Source: Octopus sinensis (lineage: Eukaryota). From it: a stretch of 64,000 nt of DNA. Positions 1,593 through 60,403 of the stretch are shown here, in pieces; position 1 is the stretch's first letter; each line of letters opens with the position of its first letter. A program made the translations under genes and the position numbers. The notes beneath the pieces were generated by a model that worked only from the letters and a program-made list of their open reading frames with translations, did not search any database and had not been told where the DNA came from. The stretch covers positions 14,322,001 through 14,386,000 of the forward strand of contig NC_043017.1 in NCBI RefSeq assembly GCF_006345805.1. Reading direction: 5' to 3'.

Positions 1593-1727
1593 CTTGAGTC
1601 CAAATCCAAGTAACTTCAGAACACACTCAATGGTGAAAAGAATAGTGAAGGCAATGTTTATGTATTTTTGAACGTTCAGGAAGATTTTGGCCTGTGGGTT
1701 CGGTTCAGGATAAGGGTTGACATAGAA
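1593..1727 (-). CDS. Cav2: Cav2 exon, IVS1-S2 loop and IVS2 (FYVNPYPEPNPQAKIFLNVQKYINIAFTILFTIECVLKLLGFGLK)
   Basis: 135 nt, strong tttcag acceptor. The donor AAG|gttcaa is weak and was placed by homology (FGxx|NYF boundary), so the 3' end is less certain. Confidence 0.9.
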
Positions 1728-1960
1728 CTGAAAAAGGAACAAAATACCAAGAAACAATATTACTATATATATGTAAGAAATCCATACTAAAATACTTGCC
1801 TGTTTATTGATTGCTCTGTATTTCCTGTGTGACTGGTCTCAATATATTTTAAACATGCTCAGACACCAACAAATATTCAATCAAGTAATACCATCATTTA
1901 CTTTACTAACACAGCCGTTAAATCAATCACAATCTTCTGCTTTGTTATCATCATCATCAC

Positions 1961-6744: not shown

Positions 6745-8396
6745 TATATATATATATTATACACACTTACATATCCACATATATACATGTATACAATGGA
6801 GTTCACACTATTTCTGTCTACTAAACTTCATTCAAAGAAGATGCTCAAGGGTGTCAGGCAGTGAAATTGAATCTAGCTATGTGGCTATGAAACAAACTCC
6901 TTAGCCACATGCCTGTACCTGGTCTGAAGTTTACTTACTCTTTTGTTTTGTACTTACTGTTTTATTTTCAGTTTTATATACTATGAATTGATATTTTTAA
7001 TAATATTACTATTTCGTAGTCTTGTGAGGTCAATTTATTTATGAGGCAGAATTAAACCGTTTGACAGGGTTATTCAACATGAAAAATATGACTCACACCT
7101 GATAGAAACCAGAATCCAAGGATTTTTGTAAAGAGCTGTATTGACAACATTATTATTAAGTTCCAAGAGAGTTCAATAAATTTTAATTTCTGCGAGAAAT
7201 GAAAGAATTTCCACACAGTACCCAAACTCTCTTCAGGGTTTTCATTGCTATCTCCTAGCATTTTATCATAAGAAATTGTTCTACCAAAATAGTTCCAGAC
7301 TGTTACAAGTTGAAGATTCTGTTCCACACTCTCCCTTGTCTTACACTGAAAATGTTCTGATGGGTCTATGTCAGAATAACACGCATGAAATACAAACTCC
7401 TGTTCCCCAGACACTTTGTGAGTTTTAAATATTCAACAATAGTTGGCTTTGTTTTCTGTCCCTCCCATATATATTTGCATTATGCACACACACACACACA
7501 CACACGTGTGTGTATATATACACACACATGTGTGAATATATGTATGTATATGTAGAATGTTTTGCAATACTGTGAAAAGCTGAAAAGTCTCCTCCTAATT
7601 CATTTGTATTGAGAAAAAGAACAAAAAGAAGAAACACCCTTGCCATTAATTGTTTAACGAGAAAATAGGTTTGCTGATTTATATTTGTCCATTAAAATTG
7701 GACAACTTAGTGAAAATGAAGTTGAATTTAGTAAAATAGGGTCTTTTGATAACCTTGCAAAGGTAGCAGCTAGAAATTGAAAAAAATGAAAGCAAGAGAA
7801 CAATCTTTGAGACCCTATGTTTCCTGGCTTACCCTTATGCCAAATCCCATTAATTTCAGCACACATTCTATTGTGAACAACACTGAGAATGCTAAATTAA
7901 GTTTCTGAAGAGCATTTTTATATTCATGTGACGAGCCATTATACTGACAAAGAAAGGGAAAAAATATAATGAGCTTATTTTCTTTCTAGACAAAAATACC
8001 AACGAACGATTTAAAACAAAAGAAAAAAAAAAGAAAGACAGAAGGCAACAACAATATTCAAGAAACAAAAAATGAAATGAAGCATTAATTCTGAAAGAAA
8101 GCATTAGTAAAATATTGGAAATATAATACTTCATGTGTCAATAGTGAGATTATTATTATCATAAATGATACAGTTAACGACATCTATTAATTACTAATTA
8201 ACTTTGTAAAATTAACCATTTTCAAATATTTATTTTCTCATTGTATGAGTCATTAGTCATCCAATTTAATGTTCATTTAATCAAATCAAATTTTACTTCA
8301 TTTTTAACGAAATACTTCATTACAGATAAAACTCTAACTTCGCATTAATAACAATAAAAACAACAACAACAACAATTATTATAACAGCAGCAGCCC

Positions 8397-15507: not shown

Positions 15508-16756
15508 CTGAAAATGAAAAAAAGAAAAAATACTGTTTAGAATCATTTAGATTTACCATCCAATCAAGCATAACACATAACCAACAACTGTGTAACAATG
15601 TGTGTGTGTGGGGGAGGGGGAATTTTTTCTGTACCAAGGATAAGATTTTGAGTGAATGTGTGGGGGTTGCACCTATAATCAAAATACAATTTATATTATT
15701 GATACAATAACCCCCCCACACACACACACAAGATACAGCAAAATTCATATAAAATTACTGGTTTTTGTCTTAAGCGATCTTTCTTTTTCTTTTTATTGTT
15801 TGACATGTGAGGTTTTAGATGTTGGTGACATACTTGGATGCAGGCAAGGTGTATTTCCCTTACTTCTGCTTTAAAATTGATTTTAAAATAGAAATGTTAG
15901 GTGTATAGACAGGGAGTTTATGTTGTGTGGATATAGTCAAGGGATATCCAATCAAGGGAAATGTGTAAAGCATGTAAATATATAGAAGGGGTCTAATCAG
16001 GGAGATTGTGTATAGTGTGGAGAGTTTGAAAAGAAAATTAGATTGTCAACCTTCATCTTCAACATAATCTATGTAATTGATTTAATTCAACTGAGAAAAT
16101 TATAAAAATATAAAGAAAAGAAATTATTATAATTGGAAACACAAAAACCTGTCATATACAAATATTTCAGGTGTAGAAATGGTACTAGACATTTCTAAAC
16201 CTACCAATGCTCACTAAACATTGGTAGTAAAACACCATCTAGGATATAATAATAATGATGATGTCTCATTCTGACTCTGAAATGTAATTTGGAAGGTACT
16301 AAATATTAATTTTTTATTTATTGGCAAATTCCACAATCAGAAGAAACTGATGAGGTTTGCATTGCAACAAAAATCAAATTCAAAAACAGTAGCTCCCATG
16401 AAGCTTGGTTGGTGGGAAGAGTGAAAAAGAAATTCTATTTTACCTATTCTTTTGAATAAAAAAGTATTTTGGGACCAACCTCACTGTTAAGGCAACGGTT
16501 AGCCTTGTGAGCCTTAAACAGTCTTCTATATTTTGCCCTATCTTCTAGATCCTCCCTTGATAATCCCTCTGTCCTTACTTCCATCATCCTTTCACCTTTC
16601 TATAAAGTGTTAAACAGCTTCATTCCTCACAATAAGCAAAATTATCAAAAGGTACAAATTCTTTTGGAATCCATGTTTTATGCTTCATCGTTTTATGATT
16701 TCATCACAAAATATTAAAAACTACAGAGATATTTGATAAAAATTTAAAATACTTAC

Positions 16757-16853
16757 TTTTAATTTTGGAATTCTGTTAATGGTTTTTAAGGGACGAAGTA
16801 CACGTAAAACACGTAATGATTTGATAGTATTAAGGTTTCCTCCTGCGCTGTCG
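16757..16853 (-). CDS. Cav2: Cav2 exon, IIIS4 ([33 protein letters not shown])
   Basis: 97 nt, ttttag/gtaagt, phase 2 to 0. Confidence 0.97.
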
Positions 16854-16951
16854 CTAAAAAATACAATGAAATCCCGATATTAATAATTAGTAATTAATAA
16901 TATTTCTAAAATATTACTAATTGAATACTTTATAAGATCTTTCTCTCCCTC

Positions 16952-20349: not shown

Positions 20350-20874
20350 CTGCAAAAGTGAAAGAGAGAAACGGGTGAGATCGATTACAAAATTAGAGGT
20401 GGTCTCAGGAAGCTTATTAAAATAGTTCAGAGCCAGGGTACTGTTGTATGTTATAAAAAGAATTTAAATGTTTAATAAATTTAAACACTATGAAACAAAA
20501 TGTCACTTTTAATTAAATACTAGTTTGAGTTTGATCATGTAATTAACAAAGGAGTTATAATGATTGGAATGAAATCAATTTAGATTTTTAATCCAAACAT
20601 TTGCACACAAACATACATGTATAACAAAATGTTTTATAGCAATTCTTTTGTTGCAGCAGTTCTTGTTTTGGGAACTCATTCCATTCAAATATTTATTGTA
20701 TAAAACAGCTAAAATAATCTCCTACAAAATCAGTTCCAATAATCCTTAGAGCCAGTAATTCTACAGCTGGTTTTACAAGACCATACTTGCAACAAAGACA
20801 CAATAATATTAAAAATACTCTGTTAAATACTGACACAAACCATTAATTAGAGAGATATGAGAATTGACACTTAC

Positions 20875-24849: not shown

Positions 24850-24876
24850 CTGGTTGAGTATTGATTCTGTTTGCAT
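24850..24876 (-). CDS. Cav2: Candidate Cav2 II-III linker microexon, 27 nt (N-ANRINTQP-G)
   Basis: Acceptor atttttattcatag, donor CAG|gtaatg, symmetric phase 1 to 1, no stop. It can be skipped without a frameshift. Confidence 0.6.
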
Positions 24877-26058: not shown

Positions 26059-26186
26059 TTGATTCATTTAAACTGACATTATCAAGTGGGGAGCGTTCCT
26101 TTTTCAAATTTGAGTCCATGTCAATTTTATTTCGCTCGCCTTTTAAGTTGTTCTGGTTAAGATTTGAGTCCAAACGGGAAGTATGA
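26059..26186 (-). CDS. Cav2: Cav2 II-III linker exon (HTSRLDSNLNQNNLKGERNKIDMDSNLKKERSPLDNVSLNES); alternative start at 26198
   Basis: 128 nt (or 140 nt from the upstream AG), tttcag/gtaagt, phase 2 to 1. It is the only candidate I found that bridges the required phases. Confidence 0.86.
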
Positions 26187-29100
26187 CTGAAAGAAATACT
26201 GTAAGTGAAAAATTTTATCTTAACAACCGAATAAACATTTGTGCAGAAGAAAACTAAGATTTAACAGGTCTGACTAGATAAGAGTGAGGAGGAGGGCAAG
26301 GCAGTTAATGCTGCTGAGAAAACTGAAAGATGAAAATCAAAAACAGAACATTAGTAAAAGTTGACTTGAAATTAAAATGGAAATGATTTATGGAAACTAA
26401 ACGAAGGAAGAAGCAAACGAAATAAAACTTGGTGTGCAATAAAAAAGAAGGTGAGGAAGAAAGAAAAGTGATGTTTAAACATGACCAAACATGGAATATT
26501 TGATACAACACGAATAATGAAGTCTACATGCTGCTTTCATTGTCTTTTGTAGATAATTGGAAGTTTATGTAGAATGTATGTGTTGTAGTCATGTATGTAT
26601 AATGTACAATAAAAATGTAAGGGCTTGTCATTTTTACACAACTAGACTGTATGACGTGCGTATATAAAAGGTAGAACACAAAGGTCACCTCAAAGGTCAA
26701 CATATCTAATTGCTGCAGAATGAAGTGTGAGTGTGTGTGTGTGCTTAATGTATATGTTTGTGTATGTGCACACAAACAAACAAACTAATATTTGTTTTTA
26801 TAAGTATTGAAATGTGTATTGAATGATAAAAATTAGATGACATTTTTCCAAACACAGAAATATTGGGTAAATTACTTTTATAAAGCAGAAAAATTTGTCA
26901 ATAACCAGCCATGTTTCTTATGTTGTAGAAAATGGTTGGTTGTTGACAAATTTTGGTAAGGCTAATTTATCTAATATTTCTGCTGTTCTGTGTTTGAATA
27001 AATATCATCTAATTTGAATTGTATATGTTTATGTATAATGTACAGTCTATGTATGGAGAAAGGTGAAAGTTTTGTTAAATTTGTATGTAATATATAAGGA
27101 GTGTGTATAATGTATGTATGGACTTGTAAAGGTTCACTTTCTATAAGTTTATATAATGTATAACAATGATGAAATTTGACAGTATTTCATATTGATTTGA
27201 TAAGAAGGAGCTGTAGCTAGAGGCAGTACAGACTCCACAGATTGATTCTGACTGATATAACCAGAAGTCTTTGAGAAATTTCTCAGAAAAATAATTTCAT
27301 CAAAGATATTTCTTATTTTTATGGGTTTCAGTTTTGTTATTGCCCACATCTGGTCTGGTCGTTCATGCATGTTCTCTTACTGTCCACACCTGATGCAGTG
27401 GGCTGTACATGATCACTGGACCTGCTAGAAATAACAGCCAATTCTCCTTCAACTCACACTCTACCGTCATAAATTATTAGAACACACAAGATTATGTAAT
27501 CCTTCACACCTCCAGAGAACACAGGATGGTCATAGATGCAATACTTTTTATCATGGTTCAAGTTTGACCAGAACTGAGGTGGGGTTCAAACAACTTCAGA
27601 TATCAGAGATGATCATGAAAGAGACTTGTTTACCTTTGCTATAAATATATTGACAATCACAAACATTAACACCTGTGGTCTATACATTAATTAATAAAAA
27701 AGACATTATGGGGTTACACTACACTTATGGACATAGATGTGGGTTACAATGATTAGGCATAAACCCATTGTAAGGTAGAGAATTTGTCTCTCCTGGTATG
27801 TGAACACTGGCACCAGTTGACTGAGCAGACAACACCAACAGTGATATTAAAAGGAGTAAGTTTAGCAGATATTATAGGATGTTATATGGCATGAGAAAAT
27901 ACTTTAAGAAGTGTTGGTCATGCACTCCACCTAGACTTACTTCCAATCATTTTCACCTTATTTCATCTCTGAACCAATAAAGACTTGAAGAAAAGACTCA
28001 CCCTAATATTTCAAGGGTCTCTCCATCCCTTAAAACCAATTATACACAAAATAAACAGAAAAGTGCCCCAACAGTTGTGTGGAGAGAGCAGAGGGTGAGA
28101 CAAGAGATGAAGAAGCATTGAATATGAAACTTCAACTCTATTGTGAGAAGAAGGGGTTAGAAAAGATATCCCAGCCATCAGCATATATATTGAACAGGAT
28201 ACAGTATAATGAAATAAGTACCTGCATGTTGCAGAGATTTATTTATAGATATATTCTGGGTTATATAGGTAGATATATATGTCAACTACGAAAAGCTATG
28301 ATCCCTTATGGTGTATATATCACTCAGTAGGCTATAGCATATCAGAGAGAAATATTAGTCAGGAATGGCTCAGAAGAGGATTAAGACCAAATATTTTGTT
28401 CTATTGTGAAAAGAAGGAGAGAGCGATAGATGGGACTAGAACAAAATAGAACCATAATCCATCACAGAAACTTTTATAGGAATCGGTAAATAGGATTCAA
28501 CTGATGGATAATGTATGTGTGTCTGCATGTACCTATGGATATATGACTGTGTGGACGTGCATCTGTGTGTGAATGTTTGTATATCTGATGAGGTGGACAT
28601 ATCCTTCATCCACAAAACTTTAAGTAATGTAGAGCAGGTTCAAACTGGTATTAAATACATGTAACTCCAACCAAATGTGTTGAGTGCTGCTTTCTTTAGC
28701 TTGCTCACCTACCCACATGTGTGTGTGTGTGTGTGTGTGTGTGCATGCACACACAGGTTTCAAAGTGCAAAAGGATATATAATTATGTGAATATATATGT
28801 GTGTGTTTATATATATATATATATACATACACACACATACATTCACACACACACACATTTACAAAAATATATAACAAAGAGCAATAAGAAAATGAATTTA
28901 AAAGAACTGCTGTATAAGTTACATAAATATTTATACTTACCAAAATATACAAGAAATCAATTTAATTTAACTATAACTTCATATAGACAATACCTTTTAT
29001 ACTAACATTGCTACAATATATATATATATGTATTGCTGCCTAGTCTAGCTCTCTTTTGCATATATGTATATAGTTGGTAAATAAATTTACATGTGTATGT

Positions 29101-29788: not shown

Positions 29789-29910
29789 TAAGGGAAATTG
29801 CCTGTTTTTAAATCTTCATTGTTCTGTGGTGAAGGAGGACAAATGTTCACTTGTGGCGGAGTTAGTCCATACTGGTCTGGGCAAAGATCTTTTTCAATTT
29901 CTTCCATTCT
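29789..29910 (-). CDS. Cav2: Cav2 II-III linker exon (RMEEIEKDLCPDQYGLTPPQVNICPPSPQNNEDLKTGNFPY)
   Basis: 122 nt, poly-T aacag acceptor, donor gtaggt, phase 0 to 2. The terminal TA is completed to TAT by the next exon. Confidence 0.9.
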
Positions 29911-40450: not shown

Positions 40451-42233
40451 ATGAAGCAAGAGTATAAATACAATGAAATCTGAGAAAAGGTAGGGATCCT
40501 CAGTGAAGAGGGTAGGTAGAGGATAGATTTTGCAATTCAGTCATAGGAGATGGAAAATGCACAAAAATATCCAGAAAGTAGTAAGACGTAGGGTTTCAGG
40601 AAAAGGACACGAGATACAATCGTCATAAATTAATGAACTGGAAATTTGTGTTTGTAGTCTTGCTGAATATTTGTGAAAAGCAAGGTGAAAGAAATGTGAG
40701 TAGAAATGAAAGTGAGCCGTTGTTGTTTAGCCTCAGATCAAACCTGATGCAGCAGAAGTGTTCCAGCCGATCACCATTTTACCAACATGTTCTAACGTGA
40801 CATTGTTTAATAATTCCTACTTTTTCAAAACATTAGGTAATTATTTGATGGAAATCTGGCTCCTATTTCCAGCAGGTCAAGATAACATGTGGCAGTTCTG
40901 TTGTTGGTTAATGTTTGCGAAAAGACAGTAGAGATAAAAAGGGAAAGAATAAAGTTATAAACATTAGAAAATGAACCCTCAAAGATGAAATTAGGTTCAA
41001 TAAGGCCTGTTTCTGCAAGATGTTAATTCCTGAGCAACACACAGACAACATGTCTGGGGACTCCAACTAAAACCTATACAGGTTAGAAAGGACTCTGTGA
41101 TCCATTCTGAATGTAGTAATTCTCATGTTGGTTGCATGATAAAACACACACAACTCATGTTGTAAAGTGGTTTGAAATAAGATGGGCATTAGGGCCCTGT
41201 AAAAATCATGCCAAATGAAAATAAGGTGGTTTTTCTGTTGCTCTGTGTGTCTAATGTCAAGGGACTGCAATAGGAAGTAAAAAACTTCACAAATGTCTAA
41301 CCTTTGCAAAGATGAAAACAAAAAAAAAGGGTAGAGAGGGGTAAAAATGAAAATGAAGAAATAAACACTGTTGGTAATTATTATAATTATATTGACTTAT
41401 ATACTTGTTCCCTGATTAATAAATTATATATGCAAATGAGATCAAACATAGGTTTAAAAATGATAATCACACTCAGGTATATATATATATATATATGTGT
41501 GTGTGTATAAGTGGCAATAGGGAGAAATGTTATGGGTCAATATTTTGGGGTATAAAGACTAGAAAAAAATCAGTTTTCTACTGGTTGGAGGAGAAAGTTG
41601 ATCTGAAATTGTGTTCAAACTGAAAGAACTGCATCATAGACCAGTAATGCTTGCCATTTAAAAGACCATTGTAGATCTACTTTTGTTTTATTTTACATTT
41701 GTATAAAATATCAATAAATGTTAGCATACATATATTACCTGTGTCTTGGATAAGATGGAATAGAATCTATGTTCAGGTCGTACATGTACAACAACATCTG
41801 TCAATACTTTATGGCATATGAAATGGTATTACATAAAACATAAGTGAAATATTGTAATAATCCATGGGTTTTCTGGAAATGGCCACCAGAATTCATCCAC
41901 AATGCAGTAGGGAATGGTTTAAGAAAATTTACATTAGGGAATCAGATTTGAAAAATAATTGGGGAGGAAAAAAACTAGTTGTGCGATCAGAAATGAAATT
42001 ATCTTAAGAAATAGGAAATATAATTATCATAGATCACTTCATTGATTTAGGTAAATATTGGGATCAGTTTAGCATTTACAGATCATAAAATTTGGCTGTG
42101 AGGTTGGAGATCTTTAATGACACTACAATGTGAAAGAAGAGGAATTTATCAGATACATTAATGTATATATAAATATATATATATATATACATATTTTATA
42201 TATGCTTGTTTGGCAGGTGTACTTGATACATAC

Positions 42234-42263
42234 TGCAAGTTTTTCCTTTTCAGCAGCTTCCTC
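42234..42263 (-). CDS. Cav2: Cav2 II-III linker microexon B, 30 nt (EEAAEKEKLA)
   Basis: Acceptor cttttatttctaataaccag, donor gtatgt, phase 0 to 0. Homologous to 45184-45213. Confidence 0.8.
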
Positions 42264-42423
42264 CTGGTTATTAGAAATAAAAGATCTTTAAATACTTTGA
42301 AAGAATTCTTCAAAACAAGATTATTAACCACTTTCAAACAGTTAAGTTTCCTAAAGGTTAAAGAAAATCTAGGAAATGATTAAACAAGTTTGTTTTTTTT
42401 TCTTTACAATTTCAATTAAAAGC

Positions 42424-42454
<31 letters not shown>

Positions 42455-42473
42455 ATATATATATATATATTAT

Positions 42474-42509
<36 letters not shown>

Positions 42510-45183
42510 ATACTGCAATAATTTTATAACCTCTAATGTCTACTTTGGTATCATCAGAAAGAAGACTGATAATCATTTCAATGGAATACATCAAACACAC
42601 AAACAATTCTCATGTATAAATAAATAGACAGATTTTACTATTGTCTGTAAGGAGAAATCTCCAATTAAGTTTTATATATTTTCCATAAATATTTATGGAA
42701 AATATAAAATGCTTCTCCCTTTTATTTAACCAGTGGACTGCAACAGTAACAGAATGAACATGTTGACAGCATTGTAGATAATGATAGACACATTTCAACA
42801 TAAATATTTTAAAAACAGAAATTGGATGAGTGAGGAGAGGTCATGTTGGTTCAACCAAGAAGAACTATATTCATAACAAAAAGAAAAAAAAGAAAAAAGC
42901 TAATTAATTAATTCAAAGACATGTTAATTAAACACAAACAAAGATAAAACTTCAAATTCAGATTTAAAATTGAATAATCTCCACTTCTAGAAATTAACTC
43001 TAATTAGCAAGAAGCATGCTGCAATTACAAGTGTTAATGCTACAGTTCTATATAGAATCAATCAATTAATCTTGGTGATTAGATTAAAGCTAAATACACG
43101 GATGGCAGAAAGACAAATTGATTTTAAGCTAAAACTAACATGGCTGGTCTAAACCTAAAAGAAGAGTGAATTGTTTCACAATGAAATTCAAATGACACTG
43201 AAAGAAAACAGATTTTTTTGATAGACTGGGGTCGGGTAGATCTACTGTGAGTCTTTCAACTATCTGTGAAATCTATGGCAGTGTGTATAAAGATATTAGG
43301 GATAAATGAAAATATATATTCTATATAACATTAGCTATGACTAGGTTTACACATGAAATACATGTTTAGTTTTTATTTATATAGTTTTATTTTATAGTTA
43401 TTTGTGTGTGCACATATAAACAAGTAACTGTGCATGTATATGTATGTACTATATATATATATATATATATACGTAATTAATTAATATATATTAATTATAC
43501 ACCTGAACAGTGCCCGAAATGTCTGGATCTAATGAAAAATTTGCCAGATATATATTTTTGGTGGGGATCCACTAATGAAGATTTCAGCAGAAATATTTGA
43601 TGAAAGATCAACATTACCGTATTTGTTTTGACAATAATGTATTAGGGAGAACCAACATCCACATGTCATAATCTTTCTGTCATTCCTTTGTCCGAATAAC
43701 AACAATGTGTCTTCAGTGACAGAGTGCTTCACCGTGTTTTAATGTGAGGCATTATAGAATTGAAATGCTTTCAAGAAAATTAATCATGAGACGCAGTGCA
43801 GTTGAATGGCCACCAGAGTCCTCGAGTCTGTGAGGTGGTGGTGGTGGTGGTGGTTATAAGTCAGGAGACTCCATGAATCAACTCAGCATTATCAATGAAA
43901 TACATTAAAAAAATGAATGCAATCATATCCAGATGTGATAACACTAGAGGAGATAATCCAAGAAGGACTCAACATTCCGGTATTTGGTAGAGTCAAAAAT
44001 ATTGAAAGGTCAAAGGTCACCATTCGCAGCTTTCATTGTTATTTCATGCTTTTCAATAATTCAAGAGCTCTCTTCAGAGATCCTAACTTGACAGTTTCCT
44101 TATCCATTTATTCATTCATACGGACATACACACACATACATATACACGTGTCTATACGTGTGTGTGTGTGATATATGCATGTATGTGTTAGTGTGTGTGC
44201 TAAATAGTGGCTACAGTTACAGTAGAAGAGAGAGCTCTGTGATTGAATCTAATAAAGCTGGTGAGCGATAAAAATTTTTGCTGTTGAATGAGGAATCTGC
44301 AACCAACAAATCAACAGAATTCTCAAGTAATCACAAAATAAAACCACAAACTACTGTAACTGGTGTATATAATATGTAATATTTAATAGTACTTCATATT
44401 ACTGTTAATATTAAGACCAACTGATGTGAATAACAGCTGATATTGGCATGTCAACAGCTCTATACTCCATATATCAACATATGGGCCTGAAAGGGTGAGG
44501 GTCATTACTGGATTGGTTGACTTGAACTCAGAATATAAACTAATAAACTATATACCATATAGCTTCTGTACACCATTCTTCATATTTTGTTAATTTCCCC
44601 AACATTCTGACATAATTACGTAAAAAATTATGTCAACAGGTCTTCACTGCATTGACATAGTTATATAAAAAAGTACAGATCAGGCCCTTGAGAATATATT
44701 TTCTCTGCTACAGAGGAATAGATAGCTGAGTATGTGATAAACGATGGAGATCACCACTGCCACCATCATCTATACGTAATCTGTGATGATGAGTCTGCTA
44801 AAATTTATTTTGTTGGACTCATGGTTATGCATTAAAAATTTTGACTCTTAGACTCCTTGTTTTGAGTTGTTTTTCAAAGTGGCTCAATAATATCCTTCCC
44901 AGCCTGTTACTTCTGTCAATAGATACATATAAGTGTCTATTTATATATATAAACATACACACACACATATATATAGATAGATATATACATACACACACAC
45001 ACATACATACAGACAAGATGTTGCACATAACTATAGATTCACAAATAGATTTTTAAACTATTTTCATTGTTTGTTGATTGACTATTTCATTAGTTGTAAA
45101 CCGACACTGCAAGCAGCCGCTAGGAAGAGCGCTACTAAACCAAGAAGGCAACTAATGGGAGGCAAGATGCAACAGATACATAC

Positions 45184-45213
45184 TTCAAGTTTTTTCTTTT
45201 CAGCTGCTTCTTG
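45184..45213 (-). CDS. Cav2: Cav2 II-III linker microexon A, 30 nt (QEAAEKKKLE)
   Basis: Acceptor tttctttccgtgtttttgacaagcag, donor gtatgt, phase 0 to 0. Continues the charged helix. Homologous to 42234-42263. Confidence 0.78.
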
Positions 45214-46059
45214 CTGCTTGTCAAAAACACGGAAAGAAATGAATGTGCTTACGGGTAAAAGGTTGGCCTCACTTCTAGCTTTCACCATCAAAACATTTAA
45301 TTTTTTTTATATACATTAAAGTCACTTACTTTGAATAATAAAAATAATGAATAATGAACAGAAAATGTAATTAAAATATTTTATAACAACATACTAATTA
45401 TTGTAGAATTATTTTGAATCACAAACAAAAGTTTATTTTTATTAATACAAAACAAAGTGATTTTTGAGTAAAATCATATATCTATAAGCTGTAACATAAT
45501 TGGAGTTAATTATTATTAAATCATTTATAATTAAGTTGAGAGGTTTTAAAAATGCATAACATGCATATTTATTGTTAAACATCTAACCTAGGTTTATTGG
45601 AGTTAATGTTATTAAAGATACACTTCTTTACTGACGATTTAGTACAGAGCTTGCAAATATTTATCCTTGTGACTGGTTTTGACAAACCAATAATCCGATG
45701 TAACCCATTTTCTTAAAATATATCTCAAAAGGGAATGCTTAACATTTGATACTTTTCTTAAGGAAACATTTGTTGGGACCGGTGTCGACAGAGGACCTCA
45801 AATAAGATGTGTGAGTGAATGTCTGATAATTCCCCACAATGTTAATGTTGGGAATAAAATTGCATGAATAACAAGTTAAACAGGAGCATTGTGTGTTGAT
45901 TGAATCTTTGACCTGATTATTTGTGGAAAGAATTACAAGGATAGATGCTTTGGTTTGCTTTGAGTATCACAGCCCAGCATTGCCTAAGTGAAATGTTTGT
46001 ATGCTTCAATGAAATTGATGTCAAAAAGATAAAGTTACTGTTTACTCTTCAGGTAGAAC

Positions 46060-49806: not shown

Positions 49807-49907
49807 CTCTTGCCGTACTCCTTCTTGCTCCTCCTCTGCAGCAGTTAGCTCTTGAGCGTTGGCCAAATTATCAACAGCAATGGCCAAGAACACGTTCAGC
49901 AGTGTGT
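49807..49907 (-). CDS. Cav2: Cav2 exon, end of IIS6 and start of II-III linker ([34 protein letters not shown])
   Basis: 101 nt, ctccag/gtgagt, phase 1 to 0. Confidence 0.97.
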
Positions 49908-57496: not shown

Positions 57497-58685
57497 TGAA
57501 ATGGATTCAGAATGGGTGCTCAACGCTGAGCCAGATACTATGCCTACGCAGACTTATTGAAGAATCAAAAGCATTTAATCGCGATCTTGCAATGGTATTT
57601 GTAGACTTTTCTAAAGCGTTCGATTCTGTAGATAGGTACAAGATGTTTGAAATCCTTAAGCTCTATGGGATACCAGACAAAATCATTTCTGCCATCAAGG
57701 TCCTCTACACAGATACGTCATCAATCATCTTAACCCCTGACGGAGAAACATCATCTTTCTCAATAAAAGCCGGAATACTGCAGGGAGACACACTCGCCCC
57801 ATTTCTTTTCATCATTGTTGTTGATTATGTGCTACGTATGTCAGTTGATACCATCTCTGGCAAGGGCTTTGAAATAAAACCAAGAAGTTCCAGACACCCA
57901 GCTGAGTACTTGACAGACACTGACTTTGCTGACGACATCGCTCTTATCAGTGATTCTCTCTCCAATGCCCAGTCTCTTTTACAATCTCTTGAACAAGCCT
58001 CAAATTGTGTAGGTCTTTACCTCAATGAGGCCAAAACTGAATACATAAACAAGTGCCTGTCCAACAGTGATTGCATCATCCATACTCTCAACAATGCGCC
58101 CTTAAATATGGTTTCTGATTATAAATATCTTGGGTCATACATATCATCATCTGGAAAAGACTTTCTAACTAGAAAGGGTATGGCCTGGTCAGCCTGTAAT
58201 GACATGCATAAGATCTAGTCATCAAATCTAAGTAGAGACTTCAAACTTGAAATCTTCAAAGCCACAGTCGAACCAATTCTACTATATGGCTCAGAAACCT
58301 GGACGTTATCAAAGAAGCTTGAGAAGCGGTTGGATGGAACCTACACTCGCCTCCTTATGAGAGCTCAAAATCTCTCGTGGAGGCACCATCCAACCAAAAT
58401 GCAAATATATGGGAAACTACCACCTGTGTCATCACTTGTGAAAGGTAGGAGAGTCCAGTTTGCTGGACATTGTTGTAGAGCTGAAAAAGAAGTAATTTCT
58501 ACTCTTCTCCTCTGGAAGCCATCTACTCGCAATACCAGAGGGCGCACACTCTCCTATCCTGATGTAATCTCCAGGGATACAGGCATCCAGCAACAGGACC
58601 TCCTTAATGCCATGATGGGCCGTGAAGTCTGGCGTAGCATGGTAAATTCCATTGTCTCGACCACGGTCGAACAATGATGATGATG
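57497..58685 (+). mobile_element. 5'-truncated RTE-type non-LTR retrotransposon (RT domain plus C-terminus)
   Basis: RT motifs FVDFSKAFDS, GILQGDTLAPFLF, FADDIAL, YKYLGS, FAGHC. One in-frame TAG at 58216-58218. (TGA)n tail. 8-bp target-site duplication acctcatc at 57489-57496 and 58686-58693. Confidence 0.93.
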
Positions 58686-59772: not shown

Positions 59773-60053
59773 CTGTTGGAAAGAAGAAAAGAAATAAGAT
59801 GGTAAATAATTAGTAGGTGTTTTTCTAATTAATTGGGTAAAAACATTAATGAGATGAAGATAATATTACTGAAAATGATGTTGTTGCTGATGATTATAAA
59901 TTCAAGATGGATTGCTACTCCCACATCTGAATAGTCTACTCTCCCTTTGCCTCTACCCATAAAGAATATATCAAGCCAAATCCAATAAATGGTCACCATG
60001 GCCAATGGACAGTATGTCACTTAGCAATAGATTCCAAACTTTGAGAGTCTAAC

Positions 60054-60403
60054 TGATTACCTCCATAGCATGGTCCTGTTTGAGTGGAGGTAATTTGAGT
60101 GATTACCTCTGTAGCATGGTTCTGTTTGAGTGGAGGTAATTTGAGTGAGTGGAGGTAGTTTGAGTGATTACCTCTGTAGCATGGTTCTGTTTGAGTGGAG
60201 GTAGTTTGAGCGATTACCTCTGTAGCATGGTTCTGTTTGAGTGGAGGTAATTTGAGTGAGTGGAGGTAGTTTGAGTGATTACCTCTGTAGCATGGTTCTG
60301 TTTGAGTGGAGGTAGTTTGAGTGATTACCTCTGTAGCATGGTTCTGTTTGAGTGGAGGTAGTTTGAGTGATTACCTCTGTAGCATGGTTTAGTTTGAGTG
60401 GAG
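60054..60403. repeat. Minisatellite, 46-bp unit with a 19-bp internal duplication in two units
   Basis: Unit tgattacctctgtagcatggttctgtttgagtggaggta(a/g)tttgag starts at 60054, 60100, 60165, 60211, 60276, 60322 and 60368. Confidence 0.93.

What the first reader, a model, noticed from the sequence alone, without database searches (positions are those of the whole stretch)
42234..45213. Duplicated pair of 30-nt microexons in the Cav2 II-III linker
Seen: two 30-nt phase-0 exons 2.9 kb apart, CAAGAAGCAGCTGAAAAGAAAAAACTTGAA|gtatgtatc and GAGGAAGCTGCTGAAAAGGAAAAACTTGCA|gtatgtatc. They share 25 of 30 nt and an identical 9-nt donor, and encode QEAAEKKKLE (net +0) and EEAAEKEKLA (net -2). They sit in about 20 kb of otherwise repeat-filled intron between the IIS6 exon and the RMEEIEKD exon. 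Inference: they arose by exon duplication. Inclusion of none, A, B or both keeps frame and would change the length (steps of 10 residues) and charge of the helix that continues from IIS6. The ends differ more than the middle, and AAEKxKL is retained. The spacing does not sterically force mutual exclusion. I do not recall this pair being described, but I cannot check.
Basis: partly seen in the sequence, partly recalled or inferred. Interest (0 to 1): 0.8.

Follow-up and report, generated by a model that had tools for sequence, protein, structure and literature searches.

The report
Duplicated microexon pair in octopus Cav2
In an octopus presynaptic calcium-channel gene, one of two near-identical 30-base mini-exons is already an annotated, reportedly optional exon, and the other looks like a preserved but unannotated twin whose use still has to be shown.

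Summary
On the minus strand, 45213..45184 (A, QEAAEKKKLE) and 42263..42234 (B, EEAAEKEKLA) share 25/30 nt and an identical 9-nt donor. They lie in the 19.9-kb intron between the IIS6-end exon and the RMEEIEKD exon of an Octopus bimaculoides-type Cav2 alpha1 gene.

Exon B is not new. All three UniProt isoforms I recovered read GVRQE|EEAAEKEKLA|RMDEIEKD. Dunn et al. 2018 (PMC5818475, Table 1) list this insert as an alternative sequence in the proximal II-III linker of Octopus Cav2, absent from KOF72121.1.

Exon A is in none of those three isoforms, and the only paper my searches found on this locus does not mention it. Its homology to B covers only a 53-nt block: 14 nt of 3' splice site, the exon, and 9 nt of 5' splice site. 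The flanks are at background identity. That pattern points to an old tandem exon duplication with both copies kept under selection, so A is probably a rare or cell-type-specific exon. I found no transcript evidence for it.

A gastropod Cav2 (Littorina) and another animal contig lack any insert here. The skip form has close to the ancestral length, and each exon adds 10 residues. Nothing forces mutual exclusion.

Novelty is modest: a new candidate member of a known kind.

The parts
49807..49907 (-). Constitutive exon encoding the end of IIS6 and the start of the II-III linker (..[33 protein letters not shown]). Donor G|gtgagt, ends in phase 0.
   Evidence: 100% identical to residues 626-658 of A0A0L8G525.
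45184..45213 (-). Candidate microexon A, 30 nt, phase 0-0, QEAAEKKKLE. Unannotated paralogue of B.
   Evidence: It is not present in P0121, P0123 or P0124.
45214..45227 (-). 3' splice-site region of A (gtttttgacaagcag). It is part of the 53-nt block homologous to B. It contains a tandem AAGCAG (NAGNAG-type) acceptor that could add one Gln (exon start 45216).
   Evidence: sequence; extent of the BLASTN block.
45175..45183 (-). 5' splice site of A, gtatgtatc, identical to that of B. It has A at -1 and T at +4, with U1 complementarity continuing to +8.
42234..42263 (-). Microexon B, 30 nt, phase 0-0, EEAAEKEKLA. Annotated exon, reported as an optional insert.
   Evidence: junction 49807>42263 reproduces the UniProt isoforms. 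PMC5818475 Table 1.
42264..42277 (-). 3' splice-site region of B (atttctaataaccag), homologous to that of A.
42225..42233 (-). 5' splice site of B, gtatgtatc.
29789..29910 (-). Next constitutive linker exon (RMEEIEKDLCPDQYGLTPPQVNICPPSPQNNEDLKTGNFP + TA). Donor TTA|gtaggt, ends in phase 2.
   Evidence: There is one residue difference (E in the window, D in the UniProt models).

Best explanation
The window carries part of the Cav2 (presynaptic, cacophony/N-P/Q-type) calcium-channel alpha1 gene of Octopus bimaculoides or a near-identical relative.

The intron after the IIS6 exon holds a two-member cluster of tandemly duplicated 30-nt microexons. B (42263..42234) is the established copy. It is included in most annotated isoforms and reported as skipped in one. 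A (45213..45184) is its upstream paralogue.

The only homology left between the two loci is the exon-definition unit itself: the last 14 nt of the 3' splice site, the open 30-nt exon, and 9 nt of the 5' splice site. From this I infer that the duplication is old and that both copies have been kept by selection for splicing and coding. A would then be a low-abundance, tissue- or stage-restricted alternative exon missed by the annotation I could see.

Both exons share the same sub-optimal donor (A|GTATGTAT, against G|GTAAGT for most constitutive exons of this gene). This fits regulated rather than constitutive inclusion.

Each exon inserts 10 E/K/A/L-rich, helix-favouring residues directly after the cytoplasmic extension of S6 of domain II. 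If helical, that is about 15 A and 2.8 turns. A is charge-neutral with a KKK patch and B has net charge -2. Choosing 0, A, B or A+B would change the length, register and charge of the spacer between the domain II gate and the rest of the II-III linker. By analogy with vertebrate Cav2.2 exon e18a, this could plausibly tune inactivation or current density.

Shown: the sequences, the paralogy, the gene identity, and B's inclusion in gene models. Inferred: selection on A, A's inclusion in mRNA, and all functional effects.
For: - Paralogy beyond chance.
- Extent of homology: it is limited to 53 nt (45175-45227 vs 42225-42277, 83% identity, E 1.4e-9). The 300-nt flanks show 31-34% ungapped identity, and the flanks have no repeat copies elsewhere in the window.
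- B is an exon: three UniProt isoforms (A0A0L8G525, A0A0L8G5M3, A0A0L8G6E5) read GVRQE-EEAAEKEKLA-RMDEIEKD. The window's exons are otherwise 100% identical to them.
- The same intron position hosts other alternative inserts in molluscs (Aplysia DDL, Crassostrea 18 aa).
- The inserts are lineage-specific additions: Littorina Cav2 (XP_070176328.1) and animal contig L002 have no insert at this junction, and the octopus skip form has close to the ancestral length.
- The shared donor is weak compared with the gene's other donors.
- Annotated models are incomplete. All three lack the IIIS4 exon that is present in the window, so A's absence from them is weak evidence.
- Precedent: the vertebrate II-III-linker cassette e18a is often left out of annotations and changes inactivation and current size (PMC5633781).
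Against: - A is in none of the three retrievable isoforms.
- Dunn et al. compared the isoforms then available at exactly this site and did not note A.
- I could obtain no transcript, junction or cross-species sequence for A.
- The five A/B differences (3 replacement, 2 silent) are too few to show coding constraint.
- Neither exon has a UGC motif just upstream of its acceptor.
- The functional effects are untested.
Confidence: 0.55

Rival explanations
1. Only B is a functional exon. A is a silent duplicate (pseudo-exon) that is never or only negligibly spliced in, and its similarity to B reflects history rather than present use.
For: - A is absent from all three retrieved isoforms.
- A is not reported at a site that Dunn et al. 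inspected.
- The five A/B differences include three replacements.
- The donor is weak.
Against: - A neutral relic old enough to have lost all flank similarity should also have lost exon and splice-site similarity. Instead 34/39 core positions and 44/53 of the exon-definition block are kept, including an intact AG, open frame and donor.
- A recent duplication of just about 53 nt, landing behind a usable pyrimidine tract, would be an odd coincidence.
- The gene models used as negative evidence even miss the IIIS4 exon.
Confidence: 0.3
2. A is conserved for an RNA-level role: a decoy or competitor exon that binds U1/U2 and SR proteins and so tunes inclusion of B, without contributing to the protein.
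For: - The best-conserved parts are the splice signals (donor 9/9).
- A lies upstream of B in the same intron.
Against: - The open reading frame and the AAEKxKL peptide core are also retained.
- There is no evidence for non-productive splicing.
- No complementary docking or selector elements were found within 400 nt.
Confidence: 0.08
3. A and B are a strict mutually exclusive pair (one and only one is included), as for most tandemly duplicated exons in ion-channel genes.
For: - Same length, same phase, adjacent in one intron, 83% identical.
- The same gene has a mutually exclusive IVS2 pair.
Against: - A skip isoform with neither exon is reported (PMC5818475).
- The intervening intron is 2,920 nt.
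- Both donors are U2-type.
- Joint inclusion (60 nt) stays in frame.
- No competing RNA structures were detected.
- So no known enforcing mechanism is present.
Confidence: 0.15
4. The similarity is a chance match in purine-rich, low-complexity intron sequence.
For: The intron is full of simple repeats.
Against: - 0 matches in 100 shuffles.
- Expectation about 3e-5.
- BLASTN E value 1.4e-9 with the low-complexity filter on.
- One member is a proven exon.
Confidence: 0.005

Closest known systems
Octopus bimaculoides Cav2 alpha1 proximal II-III-linker insert 'EEEAAEKEKL' (Dunn et al. 2018, Sci Rep, PMC5818475, Table 1)
   Same: This is exon B itself: same peptide, same junction. It is present in most isoforms and absent from KOF72121.1.
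   Different: The paper lists only one insert and gives no genomic structure. The upstream paralogue A and the duplication are not mentioned.
Vertebrate Cacna1b (Cav2.2) cassette exon e18a
   Same: - A frame-preserving optional cassette in the proximal half of the Cav2 II-III linker.
- Tissue- and stage-regulated.
- Often missing from annotations.
- Alters cumulative inactivation and current density (PMC5633781).
   Different: - e18a is 63 nt (21 aa), serine-rich and single-copy.
- It lies further from IIS6.
- It has no sequence relation to A or B, so it is an analogue and not an orthologue.
Tandemly duplicated alternative exons of voltage-gated channel genes (Cav2 e37a/e37b; Drosophila cacophony IS6 and I-II pairs; the IVS2 pair of this same octopus gene)
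   Same: Paralogous exons of equal length and phase lie side by side in one intron. This is the classical signature used to predict alternative exon clusters.
   Different: - Those pairs encode structured channel segments and are obligately mutually exclusive.
- A and B are 10-residue linker inserts.
- A neither-exon form is reported, and nothing enforces exclusivity.
Other molluscan inserts at the same junction (Aplysia 'DDL' 9-nt insert; Crassostrea 18-aa HLEEVRQDVHNQFTDHSQ)
   Same: Alternative short inserts a few residues after the end of IIS6 in Cav2 alpha1.
   Different: The peptides are unrelated, the lengths differ, and no duplication is reported.

Membership tests
Cav2-type voltage-gated calcium channel alpha1 gene, II-III linker | The exons encode a four-domain HVA calcium channel that is closest to Cav2. 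| tested here: met
   - best solved-structure matches are Cav2.1 (8x90, E 4.9e-61) and Cav2.3, ahead of Cav1.2.
- window exons are 100% identical to A0A0L8G525, a calcium-channel alpha1 model.
- Window exon termini match the peptides that PMC5818475 lists for KOF72118.1 and XP_014784009.1, which that paper treats as Octopus Cav2 alpha1.
Cav2-type voltage-gated calcium channel alpha1 gene, II-III linker | The segments lie between the IIS6 exon and the IIIS1 exon. | tested here: met
   Exon map: IIS6 end at 49907..49807, then A, B, 29910.., 26186.., 24876.., 20992.., and IIIS1 at 20351....
Cassette microexon | Up to about 30 nt, AG/GT borders, frame-preserving. | tested here: met
   Both are 30 nt, phase 0-0, cag| ... 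|gtatgt.
Cassette microexon | Found spliced into mRNA or protein models (exon B). | tested here: met
   Three UniProt isoforms contain EEAAEKEKLA at the exact junction. Table 1 of PMC5818475 agrees.
Cassette microexon | Found spliced into mRNA or protein models (exon A). | tested here: not met
   A is absent from P0121, P0123 and P0124. The peptide was not found in the searched literature. The test is weak, because those models also omit the IIIS4 exon and no RNA-seq data could be queried.
Tandem-duplication-derived alternative exon cluster | Neighbouring exons of equal length and phase with significant sequence similarity. | tested here: met
   30/30 nt in length, same phase, 25/30 exon identity plus splice sites. 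BLASTN finds a 53-nt block with E 1.4e-9.
Mutually exclusive exon pair | Exactly one member is included in every transcript. | not testable with these tools
   No transcript data were available. The published neither-exon isoform (KOF72121.1) argues against obligate use.
Mutually exclusive exon pair | An enforcing mechanism: a short intron (steric), U2/U12 incompatibility, frame shift with NMD, or competing RNA pairing. | tested here: not met
   - The intron between A and B is 2,920 nt.
- The donors are identical and U2-type.
- A+B is 60 nt and stays in frame.
- The longest complementarity within 400 nt of either exon is 13-14 nt. More distant pairing is not excluded.
Srrm/eMIC-type neural microexon | A UGC motif between the pyrimidine tract and the acceptor. 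| tested here: not met
   There is no TGC in the last 25 nt upstream of A or B (sequences). I recalled this motif rule from vertebrate and insect work, and it has not been validated in cephalopods.

The most novel reading that the evidence does not exclude
A and B form a cephalopod-specific, combinatorially used pair of duplicated microexons. They set the length (0, 10 or 20 extra residues) and charge of a rigid E/K-rich helix leaving the domain II gate of the presynaptic calcium channel. A would be reserved for particular neuron types or stages, giving octopus a splice-coded way to tune inactivation or coupling of Cav2.
Probability: 0.2. Interest if true: 0.5.

Novelty: new member of a known kind. 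Interest (0 to 1): 0.3.

Why it matters
Cav2 is the single presynaptic calcium channel of molluscs, so its splice variants are the main source of channel diversity at cephalopod synapses.

If A is used, octopus would have two paralogous inserts at a site next to the domain II gate. That is a simple, testable handle on how linker length and charge affect gating. It would also be an example of microexon birth by duplication.

If A is not used, the finding reduces to an already annotated and published cassette exon plus a relic. Either way it shows that current octopus Cav2 models are incomplete, because IIIS4 is missing from the UniProt entries.

Tried and rejected
1. The word-indexed protein search with the spliced linker returned only fragments from other animals. 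I first concluded that no octopus Cav2 was in the databases. This was wrong: the exhaustive representative search found A0A0L8G525.
2. I first thought B was the orthologue of an ancestral 'EDAMEQQKLA' segment seen in arthropod-like transcripts. Counting residues against those sequences, L002 and Littorina showed that the skip form already has close to the ancestral length, so I dropped the idea.
3. Searches with translated ORFs around A and B, to find orthologous intron DNA in other octopods, gave no hits. A linker-only search also gave no hits.
4. Exact look-ups of window ORFs and of P0121 in the contig collection found nothing on record. Locus L001 starts at the downstream exon and has no upstream sequence.
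5. A degenerate DNA pattern scan of the metagenome contigs found 0 matches.
6. The repeat finder output was swamped by TA/CA microsatellites and was not informative.
7. A search for docking/selector RNA pairing found only chance-level 13-14-mers.
9. I built hypothetical skip, A and A+B variants of the UniProt models for exact look-up. I did not submit them, because the chance of an exact full-length match was low.
10. Literature searches for the peptides, the accessions and octopus microexons found only PMC5818475.

Full report
**Observation**

Reading the minus strand confirms both segments and their borders.
- A is cag|CAAGAAGCAGCTGAAAAGAAAAAACTTGAA|gtatgtatc at 45213..45184.
- B is cag|GAGGAAGCTGCTGAAAAGGAAAAACTTGCA|gtatgtatc at 42263..42234.

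They share 25/30 exon positions and 9/9 donor positions. A 33-nt degenerate pattern with up to 3 mismatches hits only these two places in the window, with none in 100 shuffles. The analytic expectation for such a pair in the intron is about 3e-5. No third, weaker copy exists at DNA or peptide level.

The upstream exon ends ...[10 protein letters not shown]|gtgagt at 49807 in phase 0. The downstream exon begins RMEEIEKD at 29910. Inclusion of neither, either or both therefore keeps the frame.

**What the gene is**

An exhaustive HMMER search with the spliced linker found a 1857-aa protein, UniRef100_A0A0L8G525, at 97% identity. It has two sister isoforms, A0A0L8G5M3 and A0A0L8G6E5. tblastn of this protein on the window gives 100% identity for every exon from the I-II linker to IVS2, apart from one E/D difference in the RMEEIEKD exon.

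The window also carries both IVS2 variants whose end peptides Dunn et al. 2018 quote for Octopus bimaculoides (FYVNP...LGFGLK and YNGSS...MGFGIR). The best solved-structure relatives of the domain II and linker segment are Cav2.1 and Cav2.3. The locus is therefore the Cav2 alpha1 gene of O. bimaculoides or a nearly identical genome, and the segments lie in the proximal II-III linker.

**Exon B is real and already known**

All three UniProt isoforms read ...[34 protein letters not shown].... A splice-junction search shows that joining 49807 to 42263 reproduces the protein.

Dunn et al. (PMC5818475, Table 1) list this site under 'II-III linker (proximal)'.

**Exon A is not in any sequence or paper I could reach**

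A is absent from the three isoforms. Its peptide and junction strings occur in no searchable paper, and the B peptide occurs only in Dunn et al..

This negative evidence is weak. The same three models also lack the IIIS4 voltage-sensor exon, which is present in the window at 16879..16724 and in the Littorina orthologue.

I could not reach RefSeq isoforms, RNA-seq data or any other cephalopod genome.

**What the sequence says about A**

BLASTN of 1 kb around each exon against the whole window finds only the A-B match. It spans 53 nt (45175-45227 vs 42225-42277, 83% identity, E 1.4e-9). That block is 14 nt of 3' splice site, the exon, and 9 nt of 5' splice site.

Beyond this block, the 300-nt flanks are 31-34% identical ungapped, which I take as background, and local alignment recovers only microsatellite matches. 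The flanks are not copies of repeats found elsewhere in the window.

A neutral duplicate old enough to have lost all flank similarity should have lost the core as well. A recent duplication should still show similar flanks. The simplest reading is an old tandem exon duplication in which both exon-definition units have been maintained. This is an inference. The five differences (two silent, three replacement) are too few for a coding-selection test.

**Splice signals**

Most donors of this gene are G|GTAAGT. A and B both have A at -1 and T at +4 but match U1 again at +5 to +8 (A|GTATGTAT). They share a sub-optimal donor whose intronic part must be kept, which explains the identical 9-mer and fits regulated exons.

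Both have pyrimidine tracts and a CAG acceptor. A has a tandem AAGCAG acceptor that could add one Gln. Neither has a UGC just upstream of its acceptor.

**Mutual exclusion**

- The intron between A and B is 2,920 nt.
- Both donors are U2-type.
- A+B (60 nt) stays in frame.
- I found no complementarity longer than 14 nt between the 400-nt neighbourhoods of the exons and the rest of the intron.
- A neither-exon isoform is reported.

Nothing here enforces one-of-two use.

**Evolutionary context**

The Littorina saxatilis Cav2 (XP_070176328.1) reads [27 protein letters not shown] with no insert. In the animal contig L002, the IIS6 exon ends ...EEEDKE| at the same intron position and is followed directly by KQQQELEKEMEAL.

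Counting residues between AAEEE and the E-x-E-K motif gives 9 in Littorina and 11 in L002 and in an arthropod-like transcript (P0006). The octopus skip form has 10. A and B are therefore lineage-specific additions of 10 residues each and do not fill an ancestral segment. I had first thought otherwise and dropped that idea.

The same junction carries unrelated optional inserts in Aplysia (DDL) and Crassostrea (18 aa). The site appears to tolerate insertions.

**Likely mechanism (inferred)**

From ELTAA to the CPDQ break, 75-86% of residues are E, K, R, Q, A or L, with only the Gly of EGV and no Pro. Opposite-charge i/i+3,4 pairs rise from 4 (skip) to 9 (A or B) and 15 (A+B). This suits a charged single helix continuing from S6 of domain II.

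Each exon would add about 15 A and rotate downstream residues by about 280 degrees. A is neutral with a KKK patch, and B has net charge -2.

In mammals, the II-III-linker cassette e18a changes cumulative inactivation and current density (PMC5633781). A comparable role is plausible here but untested.

**Verdict**

- B is known. A is a credible but unproven alternative exon. I put about 0.55 on A being used, 0.3 on a silent relic and under 0.1 on an RNA-level decoy.
- This is a new candidate member of a familiar class (tandemly duplicated alternative exons in channel genes) at a site already known to be alternatively spliced. Interest is modest.

Noticed in passing
window 16724-16879 (-): The IIIS4 voltage-sensor exon (..[31 protein letters not shown]) is present in the window. 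It is missing from all three UniProt isoforms (A0A0L8G525, G5M3, G6E5), which jump from ..VVICAL to AVFDCVV. The public gene models are defective here.
   Followed up: partly
window 24850-24876 (-): A second microexon lies in the same linker. It is 27 nt, tag|ATGCAAACAGAATCAATACTCAACCAG|gtaatg, and encodes (N)ANRINTQP(G). It is present in two UniProt isoforms and skipped in A0A0L8G5M3.
   Followed up: partly
window 26186-26198 (-): Tandem alternative acceptors 12 nt apart (ttacag|TATTTCTTTCAG|TCATACT) explain the ISFS insert after GNFPY in isoform A0A0L8G6E5.
   Followed up: partly
window 7833-7943 (-) and about 1593-1775 (-): Both members of the IVS1-S2 alternative exon pair (YNGSS...MGFGIR and FYVNP...LGFGLK) are in the window. 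Dunn et al. list this pair as alternate sequences for a constitutive region in Aplysia, Crassostrea and Octopus.
   Followed up: partly
window 29789-29910 (-), codon 3 of the exon: The window encodes RMEEIEKD, whereas all three UniProt models have RMDEIEKD. This is the only residue difference in about 780 aligned residues. It may be a polymorphism, a different assembly or a sister species.
   Followed up: no
window 45214-45219 (-): The acceptor of candidate exon A is a NAGNAG-type tandem (AAGCAG). Use of the upstream AG would add one Gln.
   Followed up: no
window 57592-58677 (+): Two ORFs (208 and 115 aa; MVFVDFSKAFDSVDRY...), antisense to the channel gene and inside a domain II intron, look like a reverse-transcriptase fragment of a non-LTR retroelement. 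I did not check them against Pfam.
   Followed up: no
window 60020-60370 (-): A tandem minisatellite sits in the intron. Its minus-strand translation repeats SLKLPPLKQNHATEVITQTTSTQTEPCYRGNHSNYLH several times.
   Followed up: no
L001 (Logan SRR26493809), 29-184 and downstream: An unidentified animal contig carries a close homologue of the RMEEIEKD exon (RQREEMEKELADQFGVDPPQVNICPPSPQNNEDLKT) and the following Cav2 exons with much shorter introns. PPQVNICPPSPQNNEDLKT is identical in octopus, and Littorina matches from PPQVNICPPSP onward. This points to a conserved linker motif of unknown function, at least in molluscs.
   Followed up: partly
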